Shown piece after piece: positions 31,996 through 62,931 of a stretch of 64,000 nucleotides of DNA. The stretch covers positions 248,001 to 312,000 of IMG/VR virus record IMGVR_UViG_3300021057_000274. The stretch is one strand, 5' to 3'. Every line of letters starts with the position of its first letter. Position 1 is the first letter of the stretch. A program made the translations under genes and the position numbers. Below the pieces are notes generated by a model. It had not been told where the DNA came from and made no database searches. It worked only from the letters and a program-made list of their open reading frames with translations.

Positions 31996-32193
31996 ATGAA
32001 AAAATACGAACAGCTCCAAACCCCCCGAGAGAAAGCGGCGCACCTCGAGGATCTCATGACTACTCTCTACAGCGGCCTGCGCGGCTGCTGTGGGCAGCTC
32101 CACGCGTACTCAGATAACCGCGAGCTCATCAAGCGCCTGCTCCAGGGAGAGCTAGAGCGCCAACAAGCCATCGCAAAGTGCAGAAGTACCTAG
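31996..32193 (+). CDS. Hypothetical protein
   Basis: ORF in operon. Confidence 0.45.
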   Translation: MKKYEQLQTPREKAAHLEDLMTTLYSGLRGCCGQLHAYSDNRELIKRLLQGELERQQAIAKCRST

Positions 32194-32717: not shown

Positions 32718-32961
32718 CTCAAACTACCGCGACAACTATGACGCGATCTTCGGCAAGAAGAAGCCAGAGGTGACCTATGAGCTCTGGCAAGATCATCCCG
32801 GGAGCAACTCCTTCACGTTCATCAGCGAGACGAACGAGTCGTCTAGACGCTCCCTCGCGCCAGACGCGATCCTCCTAACGAAGATCACGTCGTCGTCGTT
32901 CTACCGCGCGAATCAGCTCAAGAACTCCTTCCTCAAGGAGTACACGAAGGAGCACAAGTGA
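32698..32961 (+). CDS. Hypothetical protein
   Basis: Coupled ORF. Confidence 0.5.
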   Translation: MRSKPTNSNYRDNYDAIFGKKKPEVTYELWQDHPGSNSFTFISETNESSRRSLAPDAILLTKITSSSFYRANQLKNSFLKEYTKEHK

Positions 32962-34103
32962 AGGCCGCGATCGACCTGATCTGCCGCAAGCTCGCGTCGA
33001 GCGAGTACTCTCACCAGGTGAGCTGGGCTCACCTCAGGGCCAACCAGCTCCGCAACATCGCGAGAGAGAACCCCGGCTGCGGGATCCCTGAGACGATCGA
33101 GGTCCAGGACTTTGACGGCCCTCGCCACTCCCGCGACTGGTCAGAGTACGACGTCGTCTACATCTACCACGGGATGGACTACAAGCCAGGCCCGTACATC
33201 AACGTCTTCGACGGTTTGGTCGAGCACGCCGCCAAGTTCTTCGAGCGCCTGATCTGGCCGCAGCATCGCCACATCAAGTTCGTCTCGCTCGACATCGAGA
33301 TGCCACCCTACGGTCGTCTCTGTCGAGACAAGAAGGGTACCCGCTCTGCCTACTGGGCGAACGTCGACTGGAACGCGGTGCAAGCCAAGTGCGAAGCGAT
33401 CACCGAGGTCGTCCGCGACCCATGCAAGCACTTCGCGCCGGGCAAGTACCGACATCTCGTGATCGGCGACTCTCACGCGCACTCGGCCTACAAGGCTACC
33501 TCGATGGTTCTCCGCAAGGACGAGCGTACTCTCGCTGGCGTGCTGCGCAAGGGCATCGAGAACGAGATCAAGGAGTACGGCGGTTGGGACATGAGCGAGA
33601 TCGACTCGCTCACTTGTTACTGGGGAAACATCGACATCCGTCACCACCTCTGCCGCACCGCTGATCCGCTTCAGGCGACTCGCGACCTGCTCAAGACCTA
33701 TGAGGACGCGTTGCTCAAGTTGAATCGTCCGATCGAGCTCGTGACGATGCTACCGATCGAGGATGAGTCGCGCCCCCTCCCAAAGTCGGGCTATTACGGT
33801 GATCGCTCTGACAACAAAACGCCCTTCTTTGGCTCTCGCGCTGAGCGCATCAAGGTCATGACCGCCTTCAATGATCTCCTTCGCGAGATGGCTGCGAGAA
33901 ACTCAGGCTGGACGATCTACGAGTGGCCCAAGCTCTGGTACGAAATGGACGGCGTCGAGTTCATGGACACGATCATGGAGCGCCCACGCTCGGTGCATCT
34001 AGCGAGAAAGTACTATCGTTGGGACCTCCTCAACAACGTACCCAACCCGAACCACGCGCCCGCCGCTGTGCCTGTCCCAAAGAAGAGCCTCCTCGAGTTC
34101 TGA
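32958..34103 (+). CDS. SGNH/GDSL-fold protein, putative DNA-modification enzyme
   Basis: VIGDSHAH block I, GNIDIRHH block III, SVHL block V; ends KKSLLEF. Confidence 0.65.
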   Translation: MKAAIDLICRKLASSEYSHQVSWAHLRANQLRNIARENPGCGIPETIEVQDFDGPRHSRDWSEYDVVYIYHGMDYKPGPYINVFDGLVEHAAKFFERLIWPQHRHIKFVSLDIEMPPYGRLCRDKKGTRSAYWANVDWNAVQAKCEAITEVVRDPCKHFAPGKYRHLVIGDSHAHSAYKATSMVLRKDERTLAGVLRKGIENEIKEYGGWDMSEIDSLTCYWGNIDIRHHLCRTADPLQATRDLLKTYEDALLKLNRPIELVTMLPIEDESRPLPKSGYYGDRSDNKTPFFGSRAERIKVMTAFNDLLREMAARNSGWTIYEWPKLWYEMDGVEFMDTIMERPRSVHLARKYYRWDLLNNVPNPNHAPAAVPVPKKSLLEF

Positions 34104-34104
34104 G

Positions 34105-34503
34105 ATGAGCGCTCGGCTCTACAAGTCGCACACCTACGTCGATGACTACACGGTCGTCGTACATGCCACCGGGTTTGACTTGAACGACCACCCGGACCTG
34201 CAAAATGATCTCCACATCAAGTGCGAAGCTATCTTCACTAAGTCGTTTGCGATATTTGACGGCATCGGGATGCTTGAGAACCTTCACACCGCGGAGACCG
34301 CGAGGGCTCTCCTCGATCGGCTCTCTAGCATCTTGACGGAGCAGATGGGGATTGAGGTTAAGATCATTGACTTTCAAGCCTCTTTAGACTTGCTGCACAT
34401 GAGGAATCTCGCTTACTTCAAGGTCAGCATCGATCCAGAGGTCTATAAGAACGCCGGAGCTAAGAGGTTGCTTGAGCTCCTCTGTCAACCAGCTCAAGAA
34501 TAA
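34105..34503 (+). CDS. Hypothetical protein
   Basis: ORF in operon. Confidence 0.5.
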   Translation: MSARLYKSHTYVDDYTVVVHATGFDLNDHPDLQNDLHIKCEAIFTKSFAIFDGIGMLENLHTAETARALLDRLSSILTEQMGIEVKIIDFQASLDLLHMRNLAYFKVSIDPEVYKNAGAKRLLELLCQPAQE

Positions 34504-34533
34504 ATACCCTCACGATGCGTTGCTTGTTAGAAT
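34501..34533 (+). promoter_or_regulatory. TAAAT-N20-GTTAGAAT promoter before ino1
   Basis: Same motif and spacing at 46459 and 62891. Confidence 0.6.
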
Positions 34534-34716
34534 AGCATCGTCGACCTACTCTCTGCTGAGCACAGTCTCGGACGAGCCAAAAGCCGGCAACACCAGGTGG
34601 TGTTGATCGTCGTAAAACTGATTCCGGTTCATAGCGGTCATCTAGGTTCATCCTCCTTGATCGTCGACGCAACGGCCGTGTAGCCGTTTTGAGCAACAGA
34701 CGTACAGGAAGCCAAA

Positions 34717-35859
34717 ATGTCTAAGAAAATTCGTGTCGCCGTAGCAGGCATCGGAAATTGCTTTTCCTCTCTCTATCAGGGTCTCGAGTTCTACAAGGAC
34801 ACCGACCCGGACAGCGGGATCATTCCGGGCGTGATGCACATGCGCATCGGTGGCTATCATCCGGCCGATATCCAGATCGTTGCGGCATTCGACGTCGATC
34901 GACGCAAGGTCGGTCGCCCCGTCGGCGAGGCGATCTTCGCTGCACCGAACTGCGCTCGCGTGTTCTGTCAGGATGTTCCGGACGGACCGATTGTGCAGAT
35001 GGGTCCGGTCATGGATGGGGTGTCGGATTACATGCAAGAGCAGCCAGAGAAGATCGGCTTTCGCGTCTCGAACGAGGAGCCGGTCAACATCGTTCAGGTT
35101 CTTCAAGATACGAAGGCAGACATTCTGATCAACTACCTCCCGGTCGGCTCCGAGACCGCCTCTAAGCATTACGCTCAGTGCGCGATCGCTGCTGGGGTCG
35201 CTTTCATGAATTGCATCCCGGTCTTCATCGCCTCTGATCCGGAGTGGGAGAAACGGTTCATCGAGGCTGGGCTTCCGATCATCGGCGATGACATGCGCAG
35301 CCAGTTCGGGGCGTCGATCATGTCGCAGATCCTCCAAGAGACCGCCTTCGATCGCGGCTGTGACGTGCTCTACCACCAGCAGATCAACATCGGGGGCAAC
35401 ACGGACTTCAACAACATGATGGTGCAAAGTCGGCTGAAGTCAAAGAAGATCTCGAAGGAGAACGTGATTCGCGCTCAGAACGACCTGCGCGGAATCCCGG
35501 TTGACCCCGACGCGCTCTTCGCCGGGCCCTCGACGTTCATCCCGTACCTCAAGGACAACAAGGTCGCGTACATCAATCACCGTCTGCTCGGGTTCGGCGG
35601 CGCTCCGATCGACATCGACGTCAAGCTCTCGGTGCAAGACTCCGAGAACTCGGCGGGGGTGGTGATCGACGCGGTGCGCTACCTCAAGGTCGCGAGAGAA
35701 GAGGGGATCGTCGGCGCTCTGCGCGGACCGTCGGCCTTCACCCAGAAGACCCCTCCACAGCAGATGCGCCTCAACGACGCGAAGGAGGAGTGTGACGCGT
35801 TCGCGAGGCGCGACCTGGCGGCGCTCAAGGCGGTCAACAAGTTCAAGAGCAAGATCTAA
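34717..35859 (+). CDS. ino1: myo-inositol-1-phosphate (inositol-3-phosphate) synthase, bacterial/archaeal type
   Basis: VAVAGIGNCFSSLYQG, VAAFDVD, NYLPVGSE, GDDMRSQFGA, NIGGNTDF, SKKISK, DSENSAG, KTPP. Confidence 0.93.
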   Translation: MSKKIRVAVAGIGNCFSSLYQGLEFYKDTDPDSGIIPGVMHMRIGGYHPADIQIVAAFDVDRRKVGRPVGEAIFAAPNCARVFCQDVPDGPIVQMGPVMDGVSDYMQEQPEKIGFRVSNEEPVNIVQVLQDTKADILINYLPVGSETASKHYAQCAIAAGVAFMNCIPVFIASDPEWEKRFIEAGLPIIGDDMRSQFGASIMSQILQETAFDRGCDVLYHQQINIGGNTDFNNMMVQSRLKSKKISKENVIRAQNDLRGIPVDPDALFAGPSTFIPYLKDNKVAYINHRLLGFGGAPIDIDVKLSVQDSENSAGVVIDAVRYLKVAREEGIVGALRGPSAFTQKTPPQQMRLNDAKEECDAFARRDLAALKAVNKFKSKI

Positions 35860-35870
35860 CCAAGGAATCA

Positions 35871-37097
35871 ATGAGCACCAACTCGATCTACAACTTCAAC
35901 GTCGGAGTACACAGCGCAGAGGAAGCGGCAGGCATGTCGATCCTGGCGATGCAGGAGCGCTTTCGCAAGCTCGGCGTCTCGTTCTTCAGCTGGGAGAAGG
36001 AGATGGTCGTTAACATGCCGAAGAAGCTCTTTCTCGACGAGGTGCTCAGGATCATCGAGGAGCTAGACGAGAGCATCAGCTACACCAACGTGATGGTGCT
36101 CTCGCCTGGCATCGTCGAGATAACGCTCTCGAAGCAACGGCCAGAGAGCATGCTCGAGACCCAGGACGAGCTTCGAGTCTACATCAAGCTCAACAGCTGG
36201 GAGTACTACGACGAGTACGGTGAGGAGACTCAGTTCCCCTTCGTCACCCAAAAGGACGAGATGGTCTGCGTCGCGAACATCGAGGTGATGGGACAGAGCT
36301 GGCTCGCCGAGATCTTCATCCCGAAGCTGCTCGAGTGCGTCAATCAGCACCGCCAGTCCGACAAGATCTCGCTCATCAAGTGGCTCTACTCGTCTCAGCA
36401 TGGCACCGCGAGCAAGGTCTTTCAGATTCGCAAGGACTGGGAGATCAACCCCGTCTACTACCCGTGGCTCAAGCAGCATCTCAGCGAGCTAAACATCGCT
36501 GGGGAGGAGAGCCTTCGTCCCTACTACCACGCCTTCCTCAAGAGCCAGTCACAGATCCTCGTGCTCTTCGGTGAACCTGGCACCGGCAAGACGTCGTTCA
36601 TCCGTGACATGATCTGCGAGATGGGACTCAACGCGCTCATCTCGTACGACCTCAAGGTGCTGACGTCGGATCACACGTTCATCGAGTACCTGACGAGCGA
36701 CATCTTCGACCTGATCGTGGTCGAGGACGCTGACGACCTGCTCACCTCCTCCCGGAGCGAGAACAACAAGGTCATCTCGAAGATCCTCAACGTCTCGGAC
36801 GGCATCATCAAGCTCCCCAAGAAAAAGATGATCTTCACGACGAACTTGCGCGACGTCAGCGAGATCGACAACGCGGTCTACCGTCTCGGTCGCTGCTTCG
36901 ACGTCGTTAACTTCAGAAAGCTCGACCACGTTGAGGCTCAGAGCGTCGCTGACGCGCTTGACATCAAGCTTCCAGAGAAGAAGGGCGACAGCTACGCATT
37001 GTCAGACCTCTTCTTCTTGAAGAACCTCGGGAACAGCGATGATCCGTTCGTCAAGCGCAACGAGGAGCGTCTCAAGAAGAAGCTAGGCTTCGTTTGA
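35871..37097 (+). CDS. AAA+ ATPase
   Basis: GEPGTGKTS, LIVVEDAD, ILNVSDG, IFTTN, RLGRCFD. Confidence 0.85.
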   Translation: MSTNSIYNFNVGVHSAEEAAGMSILAMQERFRKLGVSFFSWEKEMVVNMPKKLFLDEVLRIIEELDESISYTNVMVLSPGIVEITLSKQRPESMLETQDELRVYIKLNSWEYYDEYGEETQFPFVTQKDEMVCVANIEVMGQSWLAEIFIPKLLECVNQHRQSDKISLIKWLYSSQHGTASKVFQIRKDWEINPVYYPWLKQHLSELNIAGEESLRPYYHAFLKSQSQILVLFGEPGTGKTSFIRDMICEMGLNALISYDLKVLTSDHTFIEYLTSDIFDLIVVEDADDLLTSSRSENNKVISKILNVSDGIIKLPKKKMIFTTNLRDVSEIDNAVYRLGRCFDVVNFRKLDHVEAQSVADALDIKLPEKKGDSYALSDLFFLKNLGNSDDPFVKRNEERLKKKLGFV

Positions 37098-37693
37098 CGA
37101 TTCACAATCTCTTTCCGATCCCAATCGGCTCTTACAAGATCGGAAGAGAGCTGACGCTTGATGAGCTAAAGTATCTCGACGGCTTACTAAGACGACCGAA
37201 CGTCGGAAACGCTACCAGTTGCAGCTCAACGATCCTTGAGAGCCAGGAGCTGAGCGAGCTTACAAGGTTCATCCTCGGATCACTTAAGAGCTACTTCATC
37301 CAGGTCTACGACCCGCTCCACGACGTTAAGCTCAAGATCACCCAGAGCTGGTGCAACTACACGAAGCCCGGTCAGCATCACCACAAGCACAACCACGGCA
37401 ACAGCTTCATCTCAGGCGTGTTCTACGTCAAGGCCGACAAGATGATCGATAAGCTTTACTTTTATCAGGACGCGTATCAGCAACTCCAAATTCAGCCCAA
37501 AGTTTGGAATCTCTGGAACGCGCGCTCGTGGTGGCTAGAGGTAGGAGCTGGTGACTTACTCCTCTTCCCCTCTGCCTTGACCCACGAAGTAGCCGCGGTT
37601 GAGGGCACCGAAGAGCGAATCAGCATCTCCTTCAACACCTTCCCCATCGGAATCCTCGGGGACGAGAGAGATCTAACGCTGGTAAAAGTTTAG
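37094..37693 (+). CDS. 2OG-Fe(II) oxygenase (TIGR02466-like)
   Basis: SWCN...HHKHNHGNSFISGVFYV...GDLLLFPSALTHEV...RISISFN. Confidence 0.85.
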   Translation: MTIHNLFPIPIGSYKIGRELTLDELKYLDGLLRRPNVGNATSCSSTILESQELSELTRFILGSLKSYFIQVYDPLHDVKLKITQSWCNYTKPGQHHHKHNHGNSFISGVFYVKADKMIDKLYFYQDAYQQLQIQPKVWNLWNARSWWLEVGAGDLLLFPSALTHEVAAVEGTEERISISFNTFPIGILGDERDLTLVKV

Positions 37694-38470
37694 CAGAGCT
37701 TGAAAGAGCTTAGGTCTGTCGCACGCGTACATCCCAGCGCAGTTTAGGCAATTGTATTCAATCACCTTGAAGCTGCCGTCGGTCATCCGCACGAAGTCGA
37801 CAACGTAGTTTCGAGCTGGCGCGTAGTGAAGCTTGACGACGTTGAAGAACGACGTGACGTCTCGCACCTCGCTAGGCGTCAAGCGCTCGTAAGTGATCTT
37901 CGCTCCGATCTTGTAGACCGAAGAGGTGATAAGCTTGCCGTCAACGACGAAGTTGCGGTACTCCCTCTCCATCCCGTCGACGAGAGTTGCGCACAGCACT
38001 TGCTCGTCGTTCGGATGGTCGGAGAACGATGAGTCTTGGATCGACTTGCCAAAGATCGCGGCGTAGGGAGTTTGACCCTCCTCAACGATCGTGCCGGCGA
38101 ACGCTTTCAAGTCCCGCGTCGGCTTGATGAAGACGGGAGCAGTGACTGGCACGTCGCGAATCGTGCCGAAGCGCGCGAAGAAGGCGTGCGAGTTGAGGAG
38201 CAACTTTCCGAGGGCCTTGTGGTAGAAGGCCTGATCAAACGCGAGCGGGTCATAGTTCACGACGGCGCTGTGCGGAAGCACGCCGCGCTCCCGCATCTTC
38301 AGCATCTTCGTCGATCCGAGCATGATGACTCGGTCGTACTCGTAAAACTTCTCGAGCTCGACGATCTCGTCACTGAATGGGATTAACCCGAACCAGATCG
38401 GATCATGAACTCCGATCGACTGGAGCGCGAGCTGGTTCTCCATCAGCTCTTGCTCGCGCATGTGACTCAA
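37673..38470 (-). CDS. ATP-grasp protein (DUF4343/R2K-like)
   Basis: FIKPTRDLKAFAG, EYRNFVVDGKLITSSVY, YVVDF, VIEYN...AGMY. Confidence 0.8.
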   Translation of the reverse strand: MSHMREQELMENQLALQSIGVHDPIWFGLIPFSDEIVELEKFYEYDRVIMLGSTKMLKMRERGVLPHSAVVNYDPLAFDQAFYHKALGKLLLNSHAFFARFGTIRDVPVTAPVFIKPTRDLKAFAGTIVEEGQTPYAAIFGKSIQDSSFSDHPNDEQVLCATLVDGMEREYRNFVVDGKLITSSVYKIGAKITYERLTPSEVRDVTSFFNVVKLHYAPARNYVVDFVRMTDGSFKVIEYNCLNCAGMYACDRPKLFQALLNFYQR

Positions 38471-38489
38471 CTGAACTCCGAAGGTGATC

Positions 38490-38582
38490 TTAGGGATGTG
38501 ATTTTCTCCAGGGACACCAAACGGATGGCCATTGCGGATGACTAAAGATCGAGCGCTTGCAGTGCTTGCACACGGGGATCAT
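38490..38582 (-). CDS. Small Cys-rich peptide (30 aa, not in supplied ORF track)
   Basis: MIPVCKHCKRSIFSHPQWPSVWCPWRKSHP; ATG 5 nt after minus-strand TACAAT. Confidence 0.4.
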   Translation of the reverse strand: MIPVCKHCKRSIFSHPQWPSVWCPWRKSHP

Positions 38583-38587
38583 GAGAA

Positions 38588-38640
38588 ATTGTAACATCTC
38601 CGTCAACTATTGTACATCGCGTCAAGATCTATGTTAGAAT
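38588..38640. promoter_or_regulatory. Back-to-back sigma70-like promoters sharing palindromic TGTACA
   Basis: TGTACA at 38611-38616; TAGAAT at 38635-38640 (+) and TACAAT at 38588-38593 (-). Confidence 0.55.
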
Positions 38641-38646
38641 TTGACG

Positions 38647-39090
38647 ATGGTAGAGTTGAGAGATCTCGAGCTGAAAGATACAGCGGAGCTTTACGCGCTG
38701 ATCGAGATCTCGCGCAAGGATCTTCTCAATCTCTGGTGGGCGGAGTCAGCGACGTTCGAGTCGACAGCCCAGTTCATCGAGAACGCTAGACGGAGCTCGA
38801 ATCACGTCAAGGCGATCGTCGTTGACGGTCAGATCGCCGGCTGCATCTCTCTCATCGACATGCCAGACGGGAGCTTTCAGCTCGGGTACTGGTTAGGGAC
38901 TCCGCATCGCGGAAAGAGACACATTCAGCACGCGGTCGAGAAGATCAAGACCTTAGCAGAAGCGTACAGGCGTCAGATCATCGTGCGCATCAAGTCCAAG
39001 AACGTGAAGAGCCTGAGCGTCGTCAAGGGCGCAGGCTTCACGCATGTTGGCAACGACGGAGAGTGGACCTGGCACGTTTGGCGGCCGTAA
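38647..39090 (+). CDS. GNAT acetyltransferase (RimJ/RimL type)
   Basis: IAGCISL...LGYWLGTPHRGK...NVKSLSVVKGAGF. Confidence 0.85.
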   Translation: MVELRDLELKDTAELYALIEISRKDLLNLWWAESATFESTAQFIENARRSSNHVKAIVVDGQIAGCISLIDMPDGSFQLGYWLGTPHRGKRHIQHAVEKIKTLAEAYRRQIIVRIKSKNVKSLSVVKGAGFTHVGNDGEWTWHVWRP

Positions 39091-40232
39091 ACATTCTTCC
39101 CGACTTCAAGCAAGATCTGGATCGTAGCCTCATCCCGCAGATCCAGCGCTTCTGGACCAAGATCAACGAGCGTCAGCTCCACTTCATGGGAGTGCCAGGC
39201 TTTGAGACCTACGACACCGACGGAGATGAAGCTCTCGGGCGAGACGTCGAGTTCTTCCACTTCAGCATCTGCGCTGATGCCCGCATGCGCTACCTCGGAG
39301 AGAACTTCGTTCTCAACGATGATCAGCTCCTTGACCCCGTCAACAAGCTCTCTAACGCGGTCGTCGCGCACCTGTACGGCGGCCGTCGGATTTACTCGCT
39401 CTTCACGGGCGTCACTGACCCTCGCAAGGCGTACCTGGACTTTTCGCGAGTGGGAAGTGACCCTGACTACGTCAGGATGGTGCGTAGCAACGCTGAATAC
39501 GCGAAGCTACACGGTTTCAAGTTCTACGGCACAACGGAGCTACACACGTCTCTCCAGACTGCTGCGCGAAATTTCTGCCGAGACAAGTATGGTGATCCTG
39601 GCCGACCCGCAAGCAATGTCGACATTATCGAGTGGATCGCCTCCTGGCGCGACAAGGGGTTATTTGAAGCGCTTCTCGGGGCGACATCACTGGGAGAGAC
39701 CTTTGAGCACATCAAGTCCCTACCAGGAGTTGGCGCATACTACGGATACCACCTCGCCGTAGATTGCTCGCTCTTCCCGTTCACGAGATACCACCATGAC
39801 GAGCCGTTTTGCGTGCCCGGCGGCGGTTGCCAAACGACGTTGAAGATGCTCTTCCCGAGGCTCACCGCGTCGAAGAAGTTTCCCTTCGGCGAGGCGGTGG
39901 TCTGGATCGAGCAGAACCAGAAGGACCTGTTTCCGACGCTCCAGTTCCATCCGGCCCTTTGGAACATCGAGCGAGACGGGAAGAAGGTCTTTCCCTTCGA
40001 GCAGAACAAGCTGATGGTCTACGGTCTCGAGGTCGGGCTTTGCCAATTCGGAGTTTATTGCCACCTCAAGAAGAATCCTCACCTGATCGAGCGCCGCAAG
40101 GTCGGCGTCGATCCTGACCTGACGCCCCTCATCCTGCGAGAGCAGGGCGCGCCAGTTACCCCCGAGGAGCTGCGTGAGCTTCAGAGCGAAGCCGCGGCCC
40201 CGACGGCCACGAAGGGTCTCCTGGAGTTCTGA
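39063..40232 (+). CDS. aGPT-Pplase / amino-acid:DNA-transferase-like base hypermodification enzyme (HhH helical fold)
   Basis: IKSLPGVGAYYGYHLAVD HhH, VPGGGC loop, LEVGLCQFGVY; ends KGLLEF. Confidence 0.7.
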   Translation: MDLARLAAVNILPDFKQDLDRSLIPQIQRFWTKINERQLHFMGVPGFETYDTDGDEALGRDVEFFHFSICADARMRYLGENFVLNDDQLLDPVNKLSNAVVAHLYGGRRIYSLFTGVTDPRKAYLDFSRVGSDPDYVRMVRSNAEYAKLHGFKFYGTTELHTSLQTAARNFCRDKYGDPGRPASNVDIIEWIASWRDKGLFEALLGATSLGETFEHIKSLPGVGAYYGYHLAVDCSLFPFTRYHHDEPFCVPGGGCQTTLKMLFPRLTASKKFPFGEAVVWIEQNQKDLFPTLQFHPALWNIERDGKKVFPFEQNKLMVYGLEVGLCQFGVYCHLKKNPHLIERRKVGVDPDLTPLILREQGAPVTPEELRELQSEAAAPTATKGLLEF

Positions 40233-40432
40233 TGGGTCACTACTCTGAGCAGTACGAAGCTTCCGCTCGCGAGGAAGCGAAGCGCGAGAAGAAGCGTGCT
40301 CGACAGCAGCTGACGGCGATGGCGGAATTTCGCGACCAGCTGATCGGCAACATCGGTGCCGACGGCATCTCGCCGCGGCACCTGGACGCTTTTCAAGACA
40401 TGATGAACGAGACGAAGCTGCGCGCGAGATGA
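40232..40432 (+). CDS. Hypothetical protein
   Basis: TGATG coupled ORF. Confidence 0.5.
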   Translation: MGHYSEQYEASAREEAKREKKRARQQLTAMAEFRDQLIGNIGADGISPRHLDAFQDMMNETKLRAR

Positions 40433-40665
40433 AGCACAGCGAGCTTTTTTTAGACGTGTACATCAAGCCCGTCCAACCAGTCGAGTACTTTACCGTCTCG
40501 GTAGATGTCGGTGACGGCGAGGTGATCGTGCGAGATCTCACGATCTTGAAGAGCCGTAACGCAGATCTAACGCCAGAGCAGGAGAAGCTCTGGGAGATCT
40601 TCGCCTCCGCTGGATTCGTAGCCAGTCGCAAATTTTCAATTAACAAAGACCTCAAGATAGGATAA
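40429..40665 (+). CDS. Hypothetical protein
   Basis: Coupled ORF. Confidence 0.45.
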   Translation: MKHSELFLDVYIKPVQPVEYFTVSVDVGDGEVIVRDLTILKSRNADLTPEQEKLWEIFASAGFVASRKFSINKDLKIG

Positions 40666-40677
40666 AATCTAACAAAT

Positions 40678-41400
40678 ATGCTCACTGGCTCTTACTATAA
40701 GAAGGGCGAGGGGTTCGTGGATGTACCCCTTAAGCAACACAAGACCGGGCTCTACTTCCGTCCTGGCTCCCACGATCGCGCGGCGATCGTCGACTGTACC
40801 GGCGGGCGCGACTACGTCACCGTCAACTGCGCTGGGCACCGCGTCCTCGACCTGGGCGGCAACATCGGCGCGTTCATCTTCAAGGCCGCTAGGGAGGGAG
40901 CAGAGCGAGTACTCTCGTTCGAGCCCGAGCCCAGCAACTTCAAGGTGCTCCAGGCCAACCTCGAGCACGCGATCAAGCCGCTCAACAGCTCGACGATCGT
41001 CGAGGCTCGCCAGCAGGCGGTCGCCGACAAGCATGACAAGCTCGAGCTGATCGTCGGCGGCAGCTACAGCACGGGCACCCCGTCGCTGACCGCCAAGAAG
41101 GGCAAGGACAAGGTCGGCATCCTCGTTGACGTCGTGCCGTTCAAGGAGGTCTGCGAGGAGTTCAAGCCGACGCTCCTCAAGATGGACATTGAGGGCGCCG
41201 AGTACTCGTTCATCTTCGACGGCCTTCCGGAGTCGATCCGCGAGTTCGTCTTCGAGATCCACGGTCAGAACGCTCGCGAGAACGAGCTGATGCACAAGTG
41301 CTGGGAGATGTACACGAGGGACTGGGACGTCGTCTCACGCTTCGATCGCAAGTTCTTCGGTAAGACCCACCTGATCATCGCTCACCTCAAGCGGAAGTGA
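40678..41400 (+). CDS. FkbM-family SAM-dependent methyltransferase
   Basis: VLDLGGNIGAF, VLSFEPEPSNF, LLKMDIEGAEY. Confidence 0.88.
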   Translation: MLTGSYYKKGEGFVDVPLKQHKTGLYFRPGSHDRAAIVDCTGGRDYVTVNCAGHRVLDLGGNIGAFIFKAAREGAERVLSFEPEPSNFKVLQANLEHAIKPLNSSTIVEARQQAVADKHDKLELIVGGSYSTGTPSLTAKKGKDKVGILVDVVPFKEVCEEFKPTLLKMDIEGAEYSFIFDGLPESIREFVFEIHGQNARENELMHKCWEMYTRDWDVVSRFDRKFFGKTHLIIAHLKRK

Positions 41401-41633
41401 CCACGACGCCGATCCTCCCGACCGCGGGGGAGGAGATGACTGGGAATGAGCTGATCGCTCAGCTGCGTGAGCATCAGCTCACGCACAAGATCTGGGCAGA
41501 GTGGTTCGAAGCGCATCCGGAAGATCCTCGACAACACACCGAGGGAATCGGCGACGCGGTCTTCCATCGGCAGATCGAGGCGAAGTACTCAGAGATGATC
41601 CGCTGTGTGCAACGATTGATGAGTGAAGCCTGA
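41397..41633 (+). CDS. Hypothetical protein
   Basis: Coupled ORF. Confidence 0.5.
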   Translation: MTTTPILPTAGEEMTGNELIAQLREHQLTHKIWAEWFEAHPEDPRQHTEGIGDAVFHRQIEAKYSEMIRCVQRLMSEA

Positions 41634-42925
41634 TGCGCGTCGTGATCATCGGACAGCAGCTGAACCGCAACCACGCGGATCGGTTAAAGGGCGGCATTCA
41701 GACCTGTGAGCGCCTCCACGTCAAGCTGCTCAACGAGCTCGGGCACGAGATCCACTTCATCGCGGCCGCCGACACCGAACCCTTCACTCCCCACGCCAAG
41801 CTTCACCTCCTGGAGCTGCCGTCCGAAGAGACGCTCGGCGAGCTCTCGAGAGCTGACAAGGCTAAGGTCAGCCGCCAGAAGACCGTTGAGATCCGTGACA
41901 CGATCAGCGAGATTCGTCCTGACTTCATCATCAACCACAGCTACTCGAGCTCGCACGTCCGACTGCTCGCTGATCACGTCGAGCAGGGAATTCCGGGAAT
42001 CTTCTTCAACCACCAAAATCCAGTCGTCGCGAGCGACATCAGTCTGATCGCCAAGCTCGAGCAGTACATTCGCATGACTAAGCTTGGAGGAGCGCTTGTC
42101 TGCGTCTCTCCGTTCTCCCGTGACCTCTGGCGGAGGGCGATCCGCAAGCGCCTCAAGTCAGCGTCGTTCGCCTTCGTCGAGGAGGAGATGATCGACCAGG
42201 TTTATAACATGGTCTGCCCGCCAGCGTATATCGACCAGGTTAAGGTGTGGCGCTCTGATCCGAGCAACATCTTCGTGATCATCAGTCGCCCGACCAGGGA
42301 GAAGAACGTCGCTGGCTTTCTTGAGGTCTACGAGAGATCGCGTCTTAAGAATCCGGTGGTCATCTTTCTCGCTGTCGGCGGTGACCTCGAGAGCAACGAG
42401 TACTGGTTAGCCGAGCTGAAACCGATCATCGAGAGGCTCAAGGAGCAAGGTGTTCCGATCAAGGTGCGATCGAACGCTCCGCGCGCTGACGTCCTCTCTG
42501 CGCTTGAGACGGCCGCCTTCAACGTCATCCCGTGGGTCGACGAGTCGGCCTCGATCGTCGCGCTTGAGGGGGCTCAGTACGGCACGATCCCGCTCATGAT
42601 GTCGAAGACGCGTGAGGACGGATCACTGACCGGTCACGCGGCCCAATCACTCATCCAGCTCAACTCCCCCTACCTCGAGATGCTCCCAGCAGGTCGCAAG
42701 CATCAAGAGCGCGCGGCAGCCAGGCTTCGCGACACGGTTCAAAGCTACGAGATGAGTTCGCCCGACGAGCAGTACAAGATCAGAAACTATTTGCGAGATC
42801 GTACTCTACGAAAGCACTCGCTTACGTGCCGAGTTAATGATCTTGCTGACATCATGGCTGAGGTGAGATTTCGCGTGAGCTCGCATGCGACGATTCCAGC
42901 CATCGTACGTTTATTGGAGATGTGA
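41633..42925 (+). CDS. GT-B fold glycosyltransferase (GT4-like)
   Basis: MRVVII...GGIQ...LGHEIHF, VCVSPF, ISRPTREKN, ESASIVALEGAQYGTIP; ends IVRLLEM. Confidence 0.8.
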   Translation: MRVVIIGQQLNRNHADRLKGGIQTCERLHVKLLNELGHEIHFIAAADTEPFTPHAKLHLLELPSEETLGELSRADKAKVSRQKTVEIRDTISEIRPDFIINHSYSSSHVRLLADHVEQGIPGIFFNHQNPVVASDISLIAKLEQYIRMTKLGGALVCVSPFSRDLWRRAIRKRLKSASFAFVEEEMIDQVYNMVCPPAYIDQVKVWRSDPSNIFVIISRPTREKNVAGFLEVYERSRLKNPVVIFLAVGGDLESNEYWLAELKPIIERLKEQGVPIKVRSNAPRADVLSALETAAFNVIPWVDESASIVALEGAQYGTIPLMMSKTREDGSLTGHAAQSLIQLNSPYLEMLPAGRKHQERAAARLRDTVQSYEMSSPDEQYKIRNYLRDRTLRKHSLTCRVNDLADIMAEVRFRVSSHATIPAIVRLLEM

Positions 42926-43095
42926 TGACTTTTGATTACGGCCTCATGGCGCAAACGGTGAAAGCTTTCTCAGACGTGATGGAGCAGATCCAGAAATCTG
43001 AGCAGTGTTCTACCGCGATTCGGGTCGGTGCGCTCCAAGCTCAAGCTGGTCTTACTCCGCTGATGAGGGCGATCCTGGAAGAGTATAAGAAGTGA
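42925..43095 (+). CDS. Small hypothetical protein (56 aa, not in supplied track)
   Basis: MTFDYGLMAQ...ILEEYKK fills the gap with coupled start and stop. Confidence 0.5.
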   Translation: MTFDYGLMAQTVKAFSDVMEQIQKSEQCSTAIRVGALQAQAGLTPLMRAILEEYKK

Positions 43096-43475
43096 ACTCG
43101 TTCGACATCGACGGTGTTATCTACATCAGCGCTGAGTTAGGCGGAATCTTTCCAGGACCGCATGACGTGATCATCACCGGGCGCAGCTTCGAGGAGGCTC
43201 CTGAGACGATCGCGATGCTCACTAAGCGTGGCATCTCGAACTACGTCTACTTCAACCCGCTCCCGTTCGCTCAAAAGACTCGGGTATCGTCTGGAGAGCA
43301 CAAGGCCCGCATCTTAAATAATCTAAGAGAACAAGGCATCAAGGTCGGCATTCACTTCGAGGATGACCCGATCCAGGCTCAAGTGATCGCTGATCAAGCC
43401 CCACACGTCGCGATCGTTCTCCTCCAGCATGACCTGACAGAGAGGGAAAATGTCCGTCACCCGATGCCAGACTGA
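43092..43475 (+). CDS. Capless HAD-superfamily phosphatase
   Basis: SFDIDGVI motif I, ITGRS motif II, HKARIL, HFEDDP motif IV. Confidence 0.8.
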   Translation: MNSFDIDGVIYISAELGGIFPGPHDVIITGRSFEEAPETIAMLTKRGISNYVYFNPLPFAQKTRVSSGEHKARILNNLREQGIKVGIHFEDDPIQAQVIADQAPHVAIVLLQHDLTERENVRHPMPD

Positions 43476-43489
43476 CATTTTCTGGGGAA

Positions 43490-43495
43490 TAAATA
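43490..43495 (+). promoter_or_regulatory. Late promoter
   Basis: TAAATA then RBS AGGAG. Confidence 0.65.
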
Positions 43496-43513
43496 AGCTC
43501 ATAGGAGACTTAT

Positions 43514-44149
43514 ATGATCCCAGATCTTCCCGAAAATGGCATTCTCATGCCTAAGATGGTCAACCGGTTTCGTGTCACTTTTCATCGATGTCACAACCTC
43601 AAGCGCGTCGCTGAGGGGCTCAGCCTTCAGGTTCTCGACGTCTCCCTGCCGTCCGTTGATCGGCTCCTCTCCACCTCGCGGAGTCGAGGTAAGAAGGTCT
43701 ACGGGCTCGAGACCGAGGAGGGGGCTCTAACCCTCACGTTTGAGGATGACCTCCAGTCTCGCGCGATCACGGCGATTTATGACGAGCTGATCGTTGATGA
43801 GGGAAACAGCTTCACCGTTCGCGTCGACTTCTTTAACGGCAACGGAGACGTGACCGAGACGTATGAGTTTAGAGGATCAGTCGGACCGATCACCGGCCCG
43901 ATCTTTGATTATTCTGGCGGTGACTCAGGAAATCGCTCCGCCTCGATCAGGTTTCCGAGCTATGTGAACACGACAACCGACGCGCTCAGCAAAGAAACGC
44001 TCGCTCTCATGAAGTTGATCTCGACCGCTGAGCTTAATTACGGTTGGGGTGAGAAGAGGCCGGGGGTAGTGCGCCGTAGCTTGAGCATCAACGTCGGGAA
44101 CGCCTTCACTCACTCCATCGTCACCAAGCGTCCGACGGAGGCGAAATGA
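43514..44149 (+). CDS. Tail-tube (gp19) paralog with C-terminal extension
   Basis: ILMPKMVNRFRVTF, LSLQV, LTLTFEDD, VTETYEF align with ILHPRQKNRWRVIF, LSLQL, CTLTVEDD, VTETWKY of 9943..10539. Confidence 0.7.
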   Translation: MIPDLPENGILMPKMVNRFRVTFHRCHNLKRVAEGLSLQVLDVSLPSVDRLLSTSRSRGKKVYGLETEEGALTLTFEDDLQSRAITAIYDELIVDEGNSFTVRVDFFNGNGDVTETYEFRGSVGPITGPIFDYSGGDSGNRSASIRFPSYVNTTTDALSKETLALMKLISTAELNYGWGEKRPGVVRRSLSINVGNAFTHSIVTKRPTEAK

Positions 44150-45354
44150 GCTTGAAGTGGGGAACGATCGTTCCGCTCATCGGCGGGCTCACCTTGGCTG
44201 GAAAGCGAGCGACCGGCCAGGACCCAAACTTCCTCCTGACATATACGCCGTTCGGAGAGAACGAGAAGAACGTGCGCGCCTACTTCCCGAACGTTCCCTA
44301 TCACCAGCTCGACACCGAGGACCGCGGCGGCTTCGACGTCGCGGCGAACAGAGACGTTGACTTCGTTCAGGCCCTCTGTCCCTGCGCCGGACTCTCGCTG
44401 CTGAGCTCAGGCTCCCCCGAGCAGCGCGCTAAGCAAAACTACTGGATGCTCGAGACCGCCAAGTTCATGACGGGCGAGCTTCGTCCGCGGGTCTTCTGGG
44501 GCGAGAACGCTCCGGGTCTCTATAGCAACACCGGCGAGCACGTGCGTAACGAGCTCCGCCAGATCGGGGAGAGGAACGGCTACTCGTTCTCCGTCTACGC
44601 GACGTCAACTCACTTCCACGGAATTCCTCAGACCCGCAAGCGCACGTTCTACTTCTTCTGGCGTGACGGTGAGGCGCCGGTGATGGAGTACTACCGAAAG
44701 CCTGTCAAGAACTTCACCGAGTACATGCGTGAGGTGCCGAAGGACTCGATTCACCACACCGCCGACGACATCCAGGCGGCGCGTGACACTCTCAACACCA
44801 ACCCGTTCATCATGTTCCTCCAGGAGAAGCATGACGGCAAGGGCATCGAGAAGATGCGCGAGTGGCTGGTGCGAAAGGACATGAAGAGCTTCACCCTCAA
44901 CACTTACCTGTTGCTCAGCGAGCAGTTCGAGGAGTGCATGGACTGGCTGAAGCAGCGCGGCCACGACAAGCACCTTCGTCTCGCTCAAAAGGTCTGGGAG
45001 AAGGTGACCTCGAAGGGCGGCTTCTGGGACGGCAGCTTCCCGATGTATCGCGGCGACCTGATGTTCGCGACCCTCATCTCTCGGACGCTCTACGCGATTC
45101 ACCCTGAGGAGGAGCGCGTTCTGACGACACGCGAGATGATGCATCTGATGGGGATGCCGCATGACCTGCCGTTGGTGACGGGCGGCTTGAATCACATCTG
45201 CCAGAACGTGCCGGTGTCGACGGGCGCTGACATGACTAACGAGGTGATCGCTTACCTGAGGGGCGAGCGGGAGAGCAGCGGGGCGCGGTTCACGATGCAG
45301 AGCAACATCACCCAGCGCATTGACCACAGCGAGTCGGCGCTGCTAAGCTTTTAG
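44146..45354 (+). CDS. C5 DNA cytosine methyltransferase-like protein
   Basis: CPCAGLS (motif IV), GENAPG (VI), IPQTRKRTF (VIII), LTTREMMHLMGMP (IX), CQNVPV (X); ends ALLSF. Confidence 0.85.
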   Translation: MSLKWGTIVPLIGGLTLAGKRATGQDPNFLLTYTPFGENEKNVRAYFPNVPYHQLDTEDRGGFDVAANRDVDFVQALCPCAGLSLLSSGSPEQRAKQNYWMLETAKFMTGELRPRVFWGENAPGLYSNTGEHVRNELRQIGERNGYSFSVYATSTHFHGIPQTRKRTFYFFWRDGEAPVMEYYRKPVKNFTEYMREVPKDSIHHTADDIQAARDTLNTNPFIMFLQEKHDGKGIEKMREWLVRKDMKSFTLNTYLLLSEQFEECMDWLKQRGHDKHLRLAQKVWEKVTSKGGFWDGSFPMYRGDLMFATLISRTLYAIHPEEERVLTTREMMHLMGMPHDLPLVTGGLNHICQNVPVSTGADMTNEVIAYLRGERESSGARFTMQSNITQRIDHSESALLSF

Positions 45355-62893: not shown

Positions 62894-62923
62894 ATTCCTA
62901 GCTCTTCCAGAGTGTGTTAGAAT
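62891..62923 (+). promoter_or_regulatory. TAAAT-N20-GTTAGAAT promoter before dCMP deaminase
   Basis: Same spacing as 34501 and 46459. Confidence 0.6.
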
Positions 62924-62931
62924 TTCACTCT

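What the first reader, a model, noticed from the sequence alone, without database searches (positions are those of the whole stretch)
32958..45354. Candidate inositol-based DNA hypermodification pathway
Seen: one 12.4-kb island encodes inositol-1-phosphate synthase, a HAD phosphatase, an aGPT-Pplase-like base transferase, a GT-B glycosyltransferase, an FkbM methyltransferase, an SGNH enzyme, a GNAT, an ATP-grasp, a 2OG-Fe(II) oxygenase and a C5 cytosine methyltransferase. Known: aGPT-Pplase/AADT enzymes of phiW-14, ViI and M6 replace a phosphorylated hydroxymethyl group on DNA with an amine or hydroxyl nucleophile; Ino1 plus a phosphatase yields free myo-inositol. Inference: the phage may attach inositol (optionally glycosylated, O-methylated or acylated) to a pyrimidine in its DNA. 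I do not know of such a base being described.
Basis: partly seen in the sequence, partly recalled or inferred. Interest (0 to 1): 0.92.

Follow-up and report, generated by a model that had tools for sequence, protein, structure and literature searches.

The report
Phage inositol-linked DNA base modification island
A jumbo phage carries a gene island that pairs inositol-making enzymes with DNA-base-modifying enzymes, and the same pairing recurs in dozens of other phages, so these viruses probably decorate their DNA with an inositol-derived group that has never been described.

Summary
The window is part of a 389-kb T4-like jumbo phage contig from IMG/VR.

Among 79 viral loci holding a homologue of the 389-aa "aGPT-Pplase-like" protein:
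- Ino1 is present in 75; the other four are cut at a contig end.
- Its 127-aa HAD phosphatase partner is present in 73.
- The SGNH-fold protein is present in 71.
- The C5-methyltransferase is present in 42.

After dereplication at 70% identity, Ino1 is present in 19 of 19 lineages. Ino1+HAD also recurs next to TET/JBP plus a P-loop kinase (including Caulobacter phage Cr30) and inside 7-deazaguanine clusters (Menderavirus).

- The transferase-like protein is PF18723 (old Pplase clade 1), not the proven clade-2 AADT. It does keep the catalytic Glu-x3-Cys motif.
- No 5-hmdU kinase or hydroxymethylase was found in the window or 20 kb downstream.
- Relatives carry a T4 gp42-like, cytosine-type hydroxymethylase, so the target is probably 5hmC rather than thymine.
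- GT4, FkbM, GNAT, ATP-grasp and the 2OG oxygenase are lineage-specific extras.

The chemistry is unproven. Novelty: a new variant of a known kind. Interest is high.

The parts
32958..34103 (+). SGNH-fold protein (381 aa), a core component; SGNH domain plus an extra N-terminal domain
   Evidence: Invariant GDSH and G.ID.RHH motifs. Model pLDDT 90.9; top PDB matches are SGNH esterases and PatB. Present in 71 of 79 related loci. Fused to the PF18723-like domain in Aeromonas phage 44RR2.8t ORF233c.
34105..34503 (+). 132-aa ORF of unknown function
   Evidence: No Pfam or PHROG hit. No homologue in related loci at E 1e-5.
34717..35859 (+). myo-inositol-3-phosphate synthase homologue (Ino1), a core component
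   Evidence: PF01658. TIGR03450 1.3e-109, full length. PDB 1gr0 4.5e-100. Present in 75 of 79 loci and 19 of 19 lineages.
35871..37097 (+). AAA+ ATPase (408 aa), conserved only in the closest jumbo-phage relatives
   Evidence: PF00004 8.6e-10. Sits at the same position in L039, L122 and L124.
37094..37693 (+). 2OG-Fe(II) oxygenase (PF13759 / TIGR02466), a window-specific accessory
   Evidence: Absent from all related loci. Not the TET/JBP family.
37673..38470 (-). ATP-grasp ligase (R2K clade), a window-specific accessory
   Evidence: PF18299 4e-19. Absent from related loci.
38641..39090 (+). GNAT acetyltransferase, a window-specific accessory
   Evidence: PF13302 2.3e-12. Absent from related loci.
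39063..40232 (+). PF18723 (Pplase clade 1 / 'HMUDK_hel')-like helix-hairpin-helix protein (389 aa), a core component and candidate base-flipping transferase
   Evidence: PF18723 48.2 bits. Model pLDDT 90. BFVD matches with probability 1.0 to the SP10 5-hmdU DNA kinase helical part and to Pplase1 proteins of phiW-14 and phiRSL1. Best PDB match is the PaMx11 gp46 glycinyltransferase. E323 and C327 are invariant, the same E-x3-C motif as the catalytic pair of M6 gp51.
40232..40665 (+). two small ORFs (66 and 78 aa) of unknown function
   Evidence: No family hits.
40678..41400 (+). FkbM-family O-methyltransferase, a recurrent accessory
   Evidence: PF05050 7.7e-15. A homologue lies within the cassette, next to Ino1, HAD or the PF18723-like gene, in L046, L058, L072, L073 and L102 and is present in L124.
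41397..41633 (+). 78-aa ORF of unknown function
   Evidence: No family hit.
41633..42925 (+). GT4 (GT-B) glycosyltransferase, conserved only in the closest relatives
   Evidence: PF13439 / PF00534. Homologues in L041/L042, L122 and L124.
43092..43475 (+). minimal HAD phosphatase (127 aa), the obligate partner of Ino1 and a core component
   Evidence: HAD motifs I-IV present. Co-occurs with Ino1 in nearly all Ino1 loci, including phages Moby, Cr30 and RP13, and in 73 of 79 loci.
43514..44149 (+). 211-aa ORF of unknown function
   Evidence: No family hit. Not found in related loci.
44146..45354 (+). C5 cytosine DNA methyltransferase-family enzyme, a frequent component
   Evidence: PF00145 7.5e-15. 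Motifs I (PLIGG), IV (CPC), VI (ENA), VIII (Q.R.R) and X (QNV) conserved. Present in 42 of 79 loci and 11 of 19 lineages.

Best explanation
The island is a DNA pyrimidine hypermodification pathway with a dedicated donor-supply module.

Proposed steps:
1. Ino1 cyclises glucose-6-phosphate to inositol-3-phosphate.
2. The small HAD phosphatase removes the phosphate, either from free inositol phosphate or after transfer. (Inferred from family membership.)
3. The PF18723-like helix-hairpin-helix protein flips out a 5-hydroxymethyl pyrimidine in phage DNA. In relatives this is most likely 5hmC, made by a gp42-like enzyme. The protein uses its invariant Glu-x3-Cys pair to attack C6 and generate an exocyclic C5-methylene, as the clade-2 AADTs do.
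4. An inositol hydroxyl adds to that methylene, giving a 5-(inositol-O-methyl) pyrimidine. (Inferred.)
5. The SGNH-fold protein is the obligate catalytic partner of the PF18723-like protein. It occupies the slot that the P-loop kinase holds in the SP10 kinase-Pplase1 fusion. It probably activates or acylates the hydroxymethyl or cyclitol hydroxyl. (Inferred, the weakest step.)
6. The C5-methyltransferase-family enzyme acts on cytosine in the same DNA.
7. In this phage, FkbM (O-methylation), GT4 (glycosylation), ATP-grasp plus GNAT (aminoacylation and acetylation) and the 2OG oxygenase tailor the appended group. The AAA+ ATPase is an accessory of unknown role.

The likely purpose is protection of phage DNA from host nucleases.

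Shown here: gene content, folds, motifs and co-occurrence. Not shown: any substrate, product or target base.
For: Co-occurrence:
- 79 IMG/VR loci hold a homologue of the 389-aa protein. They carry Ino1 (75), HAD (73), the SGNH-like protein (71) and the C5 methyltransferase (42), in compact cassettes such as Ino1-HAD-PF18723L-SGNHL-C5MT.
- Dereplicated at 70% identity: Ino1 19/19, HAD 17/19, SGNH-like 17/19, C5 methyltransferase 11/19.

Genomic position:
- In T4-like relatives the cassette lies between gp43 and uvsX/gp41, where T4 has gene 42 and beta-gt.
- It sits next to a gp42-like hydroxymethylase that keeps Cys148 and Asp179, and next to dCMP deaminase, dUTPase and a MazG-like protein.

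The PF18723-like protein:
- PF18723 membership.
- Structure matches to Pplase1 proteins and the SP10 kinase helical domain, probability 1.0, and to the PaMx11 5-PmdU glycinyltransferase.
- Invariant E323..C327, matching the catalytic E243..C247 of M6 gp51. Mutagenesis of that pair is reported in PMC8989533.

The SGNH partner:
- Aeromonas phage 44RR2.8t fuses the SGNH-like and PF18723-like domains.
- That phage has gene 42 and gp56 but no alpha- or beta-glucosyltransferase.

Other contexts for Ino1+HAD:
- It lies beside Tet_JBP, Ploopntkinase3 and a 427-aa family with the same invariant E-x3-C motif, in about 20 loci including Caulobacter phage Cr30.
- It lies inside FolE/QueC/DpdA/QueE clusters.

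Ino1 itself is about 50% identical to a solved inositol-3-phosphate synthase.
Against: - There are no chemical data.
- The window and 20 kb downstream hold no ThyA/gp42-like enzyme, TET, 5-HMUDK or AADT. For this phage, neither the starting base nor the activation step is identified.
- Clade-1 Pplase (M6 gp55) was dispensable for the reconstituted M6 reaction (PMC8989533). Pfam now treats the domain as a helical accessory of the kinase, so it may only bind DNA.
- The SGNH-like protein stands alone in Aeromonas phage 25, next to a UDP-galactopyranose mutase. It may therefore act on the appended sugar or polyol, not on the base.
- An unactivated ether formation in water is thermodynamically weak.
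- Most cassettes lie in the hypervariable early region of T4-like genomes, where unrelated auxiliary genes also accumulate.
Confidence: 0.5

Rival explanations
1. Ino1+HAD is an auxiliary metabolic module whose inositol serves something other than DNA, such as an osmolyte, a lipid or glycan precursor, or host metabolic rewiring. On this reading it sits beside DNA-modification genes only because both accumulate in the variable early region of T4-like genomes.
For: - Published annotations treat the phage Ino1 as a horizontally acquired bacterial-like gene with no assigned role (PMC9025141).
- The cassettes lie in the replication and nucleotide-metabolism region.
Against: - Co-occurrence is 19 of 19 lineages, with direct adjacency and overlapping stop/start codons.
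- The module independently recurs next to TET/JBP plus a kinase, and next to QueC.
- In the window, modification genes are inserted between Ino1 and its HAD partner.
Confidence: 0.17
2. The pathway does modify DNA, but the cyclitol is not the final adduct. Three variants:
- The Ino1 homologue makes a different cyclitol phosphate, for example a five-membered one.
- Inositol is converted onward, for example to a uronic acid or sugar nucleotide, which GT-type enzymes attach.
- Inositol phosphate is a transient carrier or leaving group.
For: - The second-best PDB hit is a five-membered cyclitol-phosphate synthase of the same family, 6k96, E 2e-59.
- NAD-dependent epimerase/dehydratase genes accompany the cassette in 14 loci and in L124.
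- GT4 is conserved in the closest relatives.
- TIGR03450 scores below its equivalog cut-off, 366.7 against 638.
Against: - The protein is much closer to a true inositol-3-phosphate synthase (339 bits) than to the five-membered cyclitol synthase (205 bits).
- Most cassettes contain no glycosyltransferase, oxygenase or nucleotidyltransferase.
Confidence: 0.15
3. The island is a post-replicative cytosine pathway of the methyltransferase-dioxygenase-glycosyltransferase type. The C5 methyltransferase makes 5mC, the 2OG oxygenase makes 5hmC, and GT4 glycosylates it. Ino1 is unrelated.
For: - A C5 methyltransferase with intact motifs, a 2OG-Fe(II) oxygenase and a GT-B enzyme are all present.
- Such pathways are known in phages (PMC13229309; bioRxiv 10.1101/2023.12.21.572611).
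Against: - The oxygenase is PF13759 / TIGR02466, not Tet_JBP.
- It is absent from every related locus, including the closest relatives that keep the C5 methyltransferase and GT4.
- This reading does not explain the universal SGNH-like, PF18723-like, Ino1 and HAD core.
Confidence: 0.08
4. In this phage the island builds a free mycothiol-like pseudo-disaccharide (acyl-aminoacyl-aminosugar-inositol) as a small-molecule product. The steps would mirror mycothiol synthesis: Ino1, a GT4 MshA-like enzyme, a phosphatase, a deacetylase, a ligase and a GNAT.
For: The gene set parallels the mycothiol pathway (my own knowledge of that pathway): Ino1 (best NCBIfam model 'mycothiol_INO1'), GT4, HAD phosphatase, SGNH esterase fold, ATP-grasp ligase and GNAT.
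Against: - GT4, ATP-grasp and GNAT are missing from almost all cassettes, whereas the DNA-directed PF18723-like protein is universal.
- GT4 has no detectable sequence match to MshA or to any solved structure.
- SGNH enzymes are esterases or O-acyltransferases, not N-deacetylases.
Confidence: 0.05

Closest known systems
Thymidine hypermodification pathways of phages M6, ViI, PaMx11, phiW-14, SP10 and SH-Ab 15599 (5-hmdU DNA kinase + AADT/Pplase2 + tailoring enzymes)
   Same: - A Pplase-superfamily helix-hairpin-helix protein with the conserved Glu-x3-Cys motif.
- Location among nucleotide-metabolism genes.
- Tailoring enzymes such as an acetyltransferase.
- The logic of appending a small metabolite to a C5-hydroxymethyl pyrimidine (PMC8989533, PMC13458397).
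   Different: - No PF18748 kinase and no PF18724 AADT. The Pplase-like protein is clade 1, whose function is unproven.
- The obligate partner is an SGNH-fold protein.
- The donor would be a phage-made cyclitol rather than a host amino acid or polyamine.
- The neighbouring hydroxymethylase in relatives is cytosine-type.
T-even hmC glucosylation (T4 gene 42 + alpha/beta-GT) and RB69/DLP3 arabinosyl-5-hydroxycytosine
   Same: - In T4-like relatives the cassette occupies the gene 42 / beta-gt position and sits next to a gp42-like enzyme.
- The phage also encodes supply of its own donor, as RB69 and DLP3 do for UDP-arabinose (PMC13326640).
   Different: - The core cassette has no glycosyltransferase.
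- The donor is not a nucleotide sugar.
- The attachment chemistry must differ.
Phage C5-methyltransferase / TET(5mYOX) / glycosyltransferase and T-dioxygenase pathways; trypanosome base J
   Same: - A second set of Ino1+HAD loci, including Cr30, sits beside Tet_JBP, a P-loop kinase and, in Cr30, a weak TAGT-like protein.
- A C5 methyltransferase is frequent in the cassette.
   Different: - The window itself has no Tet_JBP domain.
- Its 2OG oxygenase belongs to another family and is not conserved in relatives.
Phage 7-deazaguanine DNA modification clusters (FolE, QueC, QueE, DpdA)
   Same: Ino1-HAD is inserted directly before QueC in Menderavirus phages and in three metagenomic lineages.
   Different: A different base and different chemistry. 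No such genes are in the window.
Bacterial inositol use: mycothiol and phosphatidylinositol synthesis (Ino1, GT4 MshA/PimA, phosphatase)
   Same: Ino1 followed by a phosphatase, with a GT4 enzyme nearby. Dephosphorylation may follow transfer, as in phosphatidylinositol-phosphate synthesis (my own knowledge).
   Different: The context is viral DNA metabolism. No lipid or thiol pathway genes are present.

Membership tests
Canonical thymidine hypermodification system (5-HMUDK + AADT) | P-loop 5-hmdU DNA kinase (PF18748) | tested here: not met
   No island protein hits PF18748, whereas M6 gp54 does. tblastn with M6 gp54 against the window gave only chance hits.
Canonical thymidine hypermodification system (5-HMUDK + AADT) | Clade-2 Pplase / amino acid:DNA transferase (PF18724) | tested here: not met
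   No PF18724 hit in the island. M6 gp51 hits it at 1.4e-46. hhalign of A2 against gp51 shows no similarity.
Canonical thymidine hypermodification system (5-HMUDK + AADT) | Source of 5hmdU (ThyA-like dUMP hydroxymethylase or T-dioxygenase) | tested here: inconclusive
   None found in the 64-kb window or in 20 kb downstream. About 300 kb of the genome was not examined.
PF18723 (Pplase clade 1 / 5-hmdU DNA kinase helical domain) | Pfam score above the gathering threshold, and a whole-length fold match | tested here: met
   48.2 bits against a cut-off of 25; the HMM match covers model positions 140-274 only. Foldseek BFVD gives probability 1.0 and TM 0.5-0.7 to Pplase1 / HMUDK_hel proteins of SP10, phiW-14, phiRSL1 and Lucky3.
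PF18723 (Pplase clade 1 / 5-hmdU DNA kinase helical domain) | Conserved Glu-x3-Cys near the C-terminus (catalytic in clade 2) | tested here: met
   E323 and C327 are invariant in 33 sequences. The same motif occurs in M6 gp55 and gp51.
myo-Inositol-3-phosphate synthase | Full-length homology to characterised enzymes | tested here: met
   PDB 1gr0, E 4.5e-100 over residues 2-362. PF01658.
myo-Inositol-3-phosphate synthase | Equivalog-level score (TIGR03450 cut-off 638 bits) | tested here: not met
   366.7 bits. The product identity is therefore inferred, not assured.
HAD phosphatase | Motifs I (DxD), II (T/S), III (K) and IV (DD) | tested here: met
   D5, D7, T29, K71, D91 and D92 are conserved across 15 sequences. 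The Pfam score is below threshold, 19.3 against 26.4.
SGNH/GDSL hydrolase | SGNH fold with a block I GDS serine | tested here: met
   Foldseek PDB gives probability 1.0 to many SGNH esterases and acetyltransferases. GDSH is invariant. Assignment of blocks III and V was not resolved.
C5 cytosine DNA methyltransferase | Motifs I (AdoMet loop), IV (PC), VI (ENV), VIII (QxRxR) and X | tested here: met
   PLIGG, CPC, ENA, Q.R.R and QNV are conserved in 31 sequences. PF00145 7.5e-15.
Methyltransferase-TET-glycosyltransferase cytosine hypermodification | Tet_JBP (PF12851) dioxygenase | tested here: not met
   The island oxygenase is PF13759 / TIGR02466. tblastn with a phage Tet_JBP protein found nothing in the window.

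The most novel reading that the evidence does not exclude
Many T4-like and jumbo phages replace or decorate a pyrimidine in their DNA with an ether-linked cyclitol (myo-inositol, sometimes O-methylated or glycosylated). This would be a class of DNA adduct never reported. It would be made without a nucleotide-sugar donor and without a base kinase, by a new two-enzyme pair: an SGNH-fold protein plus a clade-1 Pplase-like protein. The Ino1+HAD pair would be a portable donor-supply module. It also serves TET/kinase thymine pathways (Cr30) and possibly 7-deazaguanine pathways (Menderavirus).
Probability: 0.4. Interest if true: 0.9.

Novelty: new variant of a known kind. Interest (0 to 1): 0.82.

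Why it matters
- Known phage DNA hypermodifications use sugars, amino acids or polyamines. A carbocyclic polyol on a base would be a new chemical class of natural DNA.
- It would give clade-1 Pplase proteins, whose role has been open since 2013, and a new SGNH family a function on DNA.
- It would explain why inositol synthase genes occur in phages of hosts that do not use inositol lipids.
- The cassette is common in environmental T4-like phages: 166 confirmed matches in IMG/VR with one pattern search.
- Cultured relatives of three related kinds exist, so the prediction can be tested directly by mass spectrometry. Cr30 (TET/JBP context), Menderavirus (7-deazaguanine context) and RP13 encode Ino1+HAD. 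Aeromonas 44RR2.8t carries only the SGNH-like/PF18723-like fusion.
- Such DNA would probably resist many restriction enzymes and could supply new tools for DNA labelling.

Tried and rejected
- Megablast of the island against 50,697 phage records found no match.
- Direct tblastn/phmmer of M6 gp51, gp52, gp53, gp54, gp55 and gp58 against the window gave only chance hits.
- My first assumption, that the 381-aa protein was the aGPT-Pplase, was wrong. It has the SGNH fold.
- Profile searches of A1, A2, A3 and of GT4 against PDB sequences gave nothing.
- NCBIfam gave no hit for the 389-aa or 381-aa proteins.
- hhalign of A2 against M6 gp55 was weak (E 0.013) though colinear. Against gp51 and gp54 there was nothing.
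- The 427-aa family of the TET context compared with A2, gp51 and gp55 gave only weak colinear alignments, E 0.03-0.14. Its Pplase-like nature rests mainly on the shared E-x3-C motif.
- The search for a ThyA/gp42-like enzyme, TET, kinase or 427-aa-family gene in the window plus 20 kb downstream was negative.
- One contig look-up failed because of a GTG start codon.
- The C-terminal extension of the longer PF18723-like proteins has no Pfam hit.
- Homologues of the C5 methyltransferase carry only generic names.
- Literature searches found no paper linking inositol to DNA modification. The mentions of inositol are incidental glycosyltransferase names.
- Nothing is published on DNA modification in Cr30.

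Full report
**What is in the window**

The window is bases 248001-312000 of IMG/VR contig IMGVR_UViG_3300021057_000274 (389,331 bp). It is a phage with a T4-like core: gp32, UvsX, UvsW, a gp15-like protein, a T4-type terminase and class I ribonucleotide reductase. It has no nucleotide-level relative among 50,697 phage records.

Region 32958-45354 is a tightly packed run of genes, almost all on one strand.

| Gene | Coordinates | Evidence |
|---|---|---|
| SGNH-fold protein | 32958-34103 | |
| Ino1 | 34717-35859 | |
| 2OG-Fe(II) oxygenase | 37094-37693 | |
| ATP-grasp (minus strand) | 37673-38470 | |
| GNAT | 38641-39090 | |
| PF18723-family protein | 39063-40232 | |
| FkbM methyltransferase | 40678-41400 | |
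| GT4 glycosyltransferase | 41633-42925 | |
| HAD phosphatase | 43092-43475 | |
| C5 cytosine methyltransferase | 44146-45354 | |

**Which protein is which**

The 389-aa protein hits Pfam PF18723. In the current Pfam this family is called "5-hmdU DNA kinase, helical domain".

I calibrated against the experimentally studied phage M6:
- gp51, the proven glycine:DNA transferase, is PF18724 (ADDT, the old aGPT-Pplase2).
- gp54, the kinase, is PF18748.
- gp55 is a full-length PF18723 protein (the old aGPT-Pplase1).

gp55 was not needed in the M6 reconstitution (PMC8989533).

The AlphaFold model of the 389-aa protein (pLDDT 90) gave these matches:
- Probability 1.0 and TM 0.5-0.7 to Pplase1 / HMUDK_hel proteins of SP10, phiW-14, phiRSL1 and others.
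- The best PDB match, although weak, is the PaMx11 5-PmdU glycinyltransferase, followed by helix-hairpin-helix DNA glycosylases.

In an alignment of 33 homologues, E323 and C327 are invariant. The same Glu-x3-Cys-x-aromatic motif is found in M6 gp55 and in M6 gp51. In gp51, mutation of either residue abolishes activity (PMC8989533). This suggests a catalytic role, not merely a DNA-binding one.

The 381-aa protein has no Pfam hit. It has invariant GDSH and RHH motifs, and its model (pLDDT 90.9) matches SGNH esterases and PatB O-acetyltransferases.

**The co-segregation test**

I tested this in two directions.

Starting from Ino1 (32 viral loci):
- The 127-aa HAD gene accompanies Ino1 almost everywhere, including in the cultured phages Moby, Cr30 and RP13. 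Ino1+HAD is a conserved two-gene module.
- In the window the two genes are separated by 7 kb of inserted genes.

Starting from the 389-aa protein (79 viral loci kept out of 166 confirmed matches):
- Ino1 is present in 75. The four exceptions are cut off by a contig end.
- HAD is present in 73, the SGNH-like gene in 71 and the C5 methyltransferase in 42.
- The usual form is a compact cassette, Ino1-HAD-PF18723L-SGNHL-(C5MT) or SGNHL-Ino1-HAD-PF18723L.
- After clustering the PF18723-like proteins at 70% identity there are 19 lineages. Ino1 is in 19, HAD in 17, SGNH-like in 17 and the C5 methyltransferase in 11.

Distribution of the accessory genes:
- GT4 is kept only in the closest relatives (L041/L042, L122, L124).
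- The AAA+ ATPase is kept only in L039, L122 and L124.
- FkbM recurs in about six loci, within the cassette next to Ino1, HAD or the PF18723-like gene.
- The 2OG oxygenase, ATP-grasp, GNAT and the 211-aa ORF are unique to the window.

**Genomic setting in relatives**

In the T4-like relatives the cassette lies between the DNA polymerase and uvsX/gp41. Upstream it is often preceded by a MazG-like protein, a dUTPase, a dCMP deaminase and a short thymidylate-synthase homologue. This is where T4 carries gene 42 and beta-glucosyltransferase.

The thymidylate-synthase homologue is present in 35 loci. It aligns with T4 gp42 and keeps both the catalytic Cys148 and Asp179, the residue that specifies cytosine (the role of Asp179 is my own knowledge).

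Aeromonas phage 44RR2.8t provides three further observations:
- It has gene 42 and gp56 but no alpha- or beta-glucosyltransferase.
- Its ORF233c is a 795-aa fusion of the SGNH-like and PF18723-like domains.
- That fusion lies next to a sodium:solute symporter of the sugar type.

Bacillus phage SP10 fuses its 5-hmdU kinase to a PF18723 domain (PMC8989533). By analogy, the SGNH-like domain occupies the slot of the enzyme that acts on the flipped-out hydroxymethyl base.

**Ino1+HAD in other DNA-modification contexts**

TET/JBP context. The loci whose Ino1 is closest to the window's (about 79% identity) carry this order: a 427-aa protein, Ino1, HAD, a P-loop kinase (PF18751), then Tet_JBP (PF12851).
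- Each of these partner genes is found in 17 to 22 of the fetched loci, including Caulobacter phage Cr30, where Tet_JBP is confirmed.
- The 427-aa family has an invariant E-x3-C motif in the same sequence context.
- It aligns weakly but colinearly with the PF18723-like profile and with M6 gp51.
- That context therefore holds a hydroxylase and a kinase, with the 427-aa family as a weakly supported candidate transferase. Together with an inositol supply, this resembles the canonical thymine pathway.

7-deazaguanine context. Ino1-HAD sits directly before QueC inside FolE/QueC/DpdA/QueE clusters in Menderavirus phages and in three metagenomic lineages.

Recurrence beside three different base-modification systems is the strongest argument that the product of Ino1+HAD is used for DNA modification.

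**What remains unknown for this phage**

- No ThyA/gp42-like enzyme, TET, 5-HMUDK or AADT was found in the 64-kb window or in 20 kb downstream. About 300 kb of the genome could not be examined.
- The target base, the activation step and the role of the SGNH-like protein are all inferred.
- The SGNH-like protein also occurs alone in Aeromonas phage 25, next to a UDP-galactopyranose mutase. It may therefore act on an appended sugar or polyol rather than on the base.
- The C5 methyltransferase has all its catalytic motifs and co-occurs with gp42-like genes in 20 loci. Its role in DNA that already contains hmC is unclear. One possibility is that it catalyses C6-activated chemistry on 5hmC, which C5 methyltransferases can do in vitro. 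This comes from my own knowledge and was not tested.

**Comparison with what is known, and novelty**

The system works like the known 5-hydroxymethyl-pyrimidine hypermodification pathways. It fails the membership test for the canonical kinase+AADT system. It uses a different enzyme pair, and a donor that the phage makes itself.

Searches of 8.4 million papers and preprints found nothing linking inositol to DNA modification. Published phage genome papers treat Ino1 as an unexplained bacterial-like gene.

I rate it a new variant of a known kind. Interest is high because cultured phages with related cassettes make it directly testable.

**Verdict**

- Observation: confirmed.
- Interpretation: partly supported.
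- Best explanation (an inositol-derived DNA pyrimidine hypermodification): confidence about 0.5.

Noticed in passing
window 32178-32717: An Acb1 (anti-CBASS) homologue, PF23474 2e-25, lies directly upstream of the island. It keeps this position in relatives L040-L042, L046, L122 and L124.
   Followed up: partly
L012 8634-13372; L119-L121; L002 (Caulobacter phage Cr30) 4709-13602: A second Ino1+HAD context with the order 427-aa protein, Ino1, HAD, Ploopntkinase3, Tet_JBP. The 427-aa family has an invariant E-x3-C motif. Cr30 also has a weak TAGT-like protein (E 8.5e-4) just upstream of Ino1. Cr30 is a cultured, tractable model.
   Followed up: partly
L001 (Stenotrophomonas phage Moby) 11201-16615; L020, L032, L033: Ino1-HAD is inserted inside 7-deazaguanine clusters (FolE, QueC, DpdA, QueE), with a conserved Ino1-HAD-QueC adjacency in three lineages. 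This raises the possibility of an inositol-bearing 7-deazaguanine.
   Followed up: partly
L038 (Aeromonas phage 44RR2.8t) 5408-9388; L126: ORF233c is a 795-aa fusion of the SGNH-like and PF18723-like domains. It lies next to a phage-encoded Na+/solute symporter (PF00474 6e-53). The phage has gene 42 and gp56 but no glucosyltransferase.
   Followed up: partly
L127 (Aeromonas phage 25) 1776-5047: Here the SGNH-like protein stands alone, without a PF18723-like partner. It is preceded by a UDP-galactopyranose mutase (PF03275 5e-54) and an unknown 358-aa protein.
   Followed up: partly
L072 9929-11479, L076 9956-11419, L084 9953-11512: In one marine lineage the PF18723-like protein is 487-519 aa long, with a C-terminal extension of about 130-150 aa that has no Pfam hit. 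The L076 and L084 loci lack the C5 methyltransferase, whereas L072 has one.
   Followed up: partly
window 58107-58868: A Thg1-family tRNA-His guanylyltransferase homologue (PF04446 4.9e-26) encoded by the phage.
   Followed up: no
window 53405-56055: An adjacent pair: a MoxR-like AAA_3 ATPase and a DUF2201 putative metallopeptidase.
   Followed up: no
window 62914-63486; L125 11554-12087: A dCMP deaminase (PF00383 8e-20). Just beyond the window there is a 177-aa ORF with a DNA_pol3_alpha hit, possibly a fragment or a split gene.
   Followed up: no
window 45351-46172 (minus strand): A 273-aa ORF on the opposite strand, between the C5 methyltransferase and the ribonucleotide reductase. It has no family hit and was not found in relatives.
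   Followed up: no
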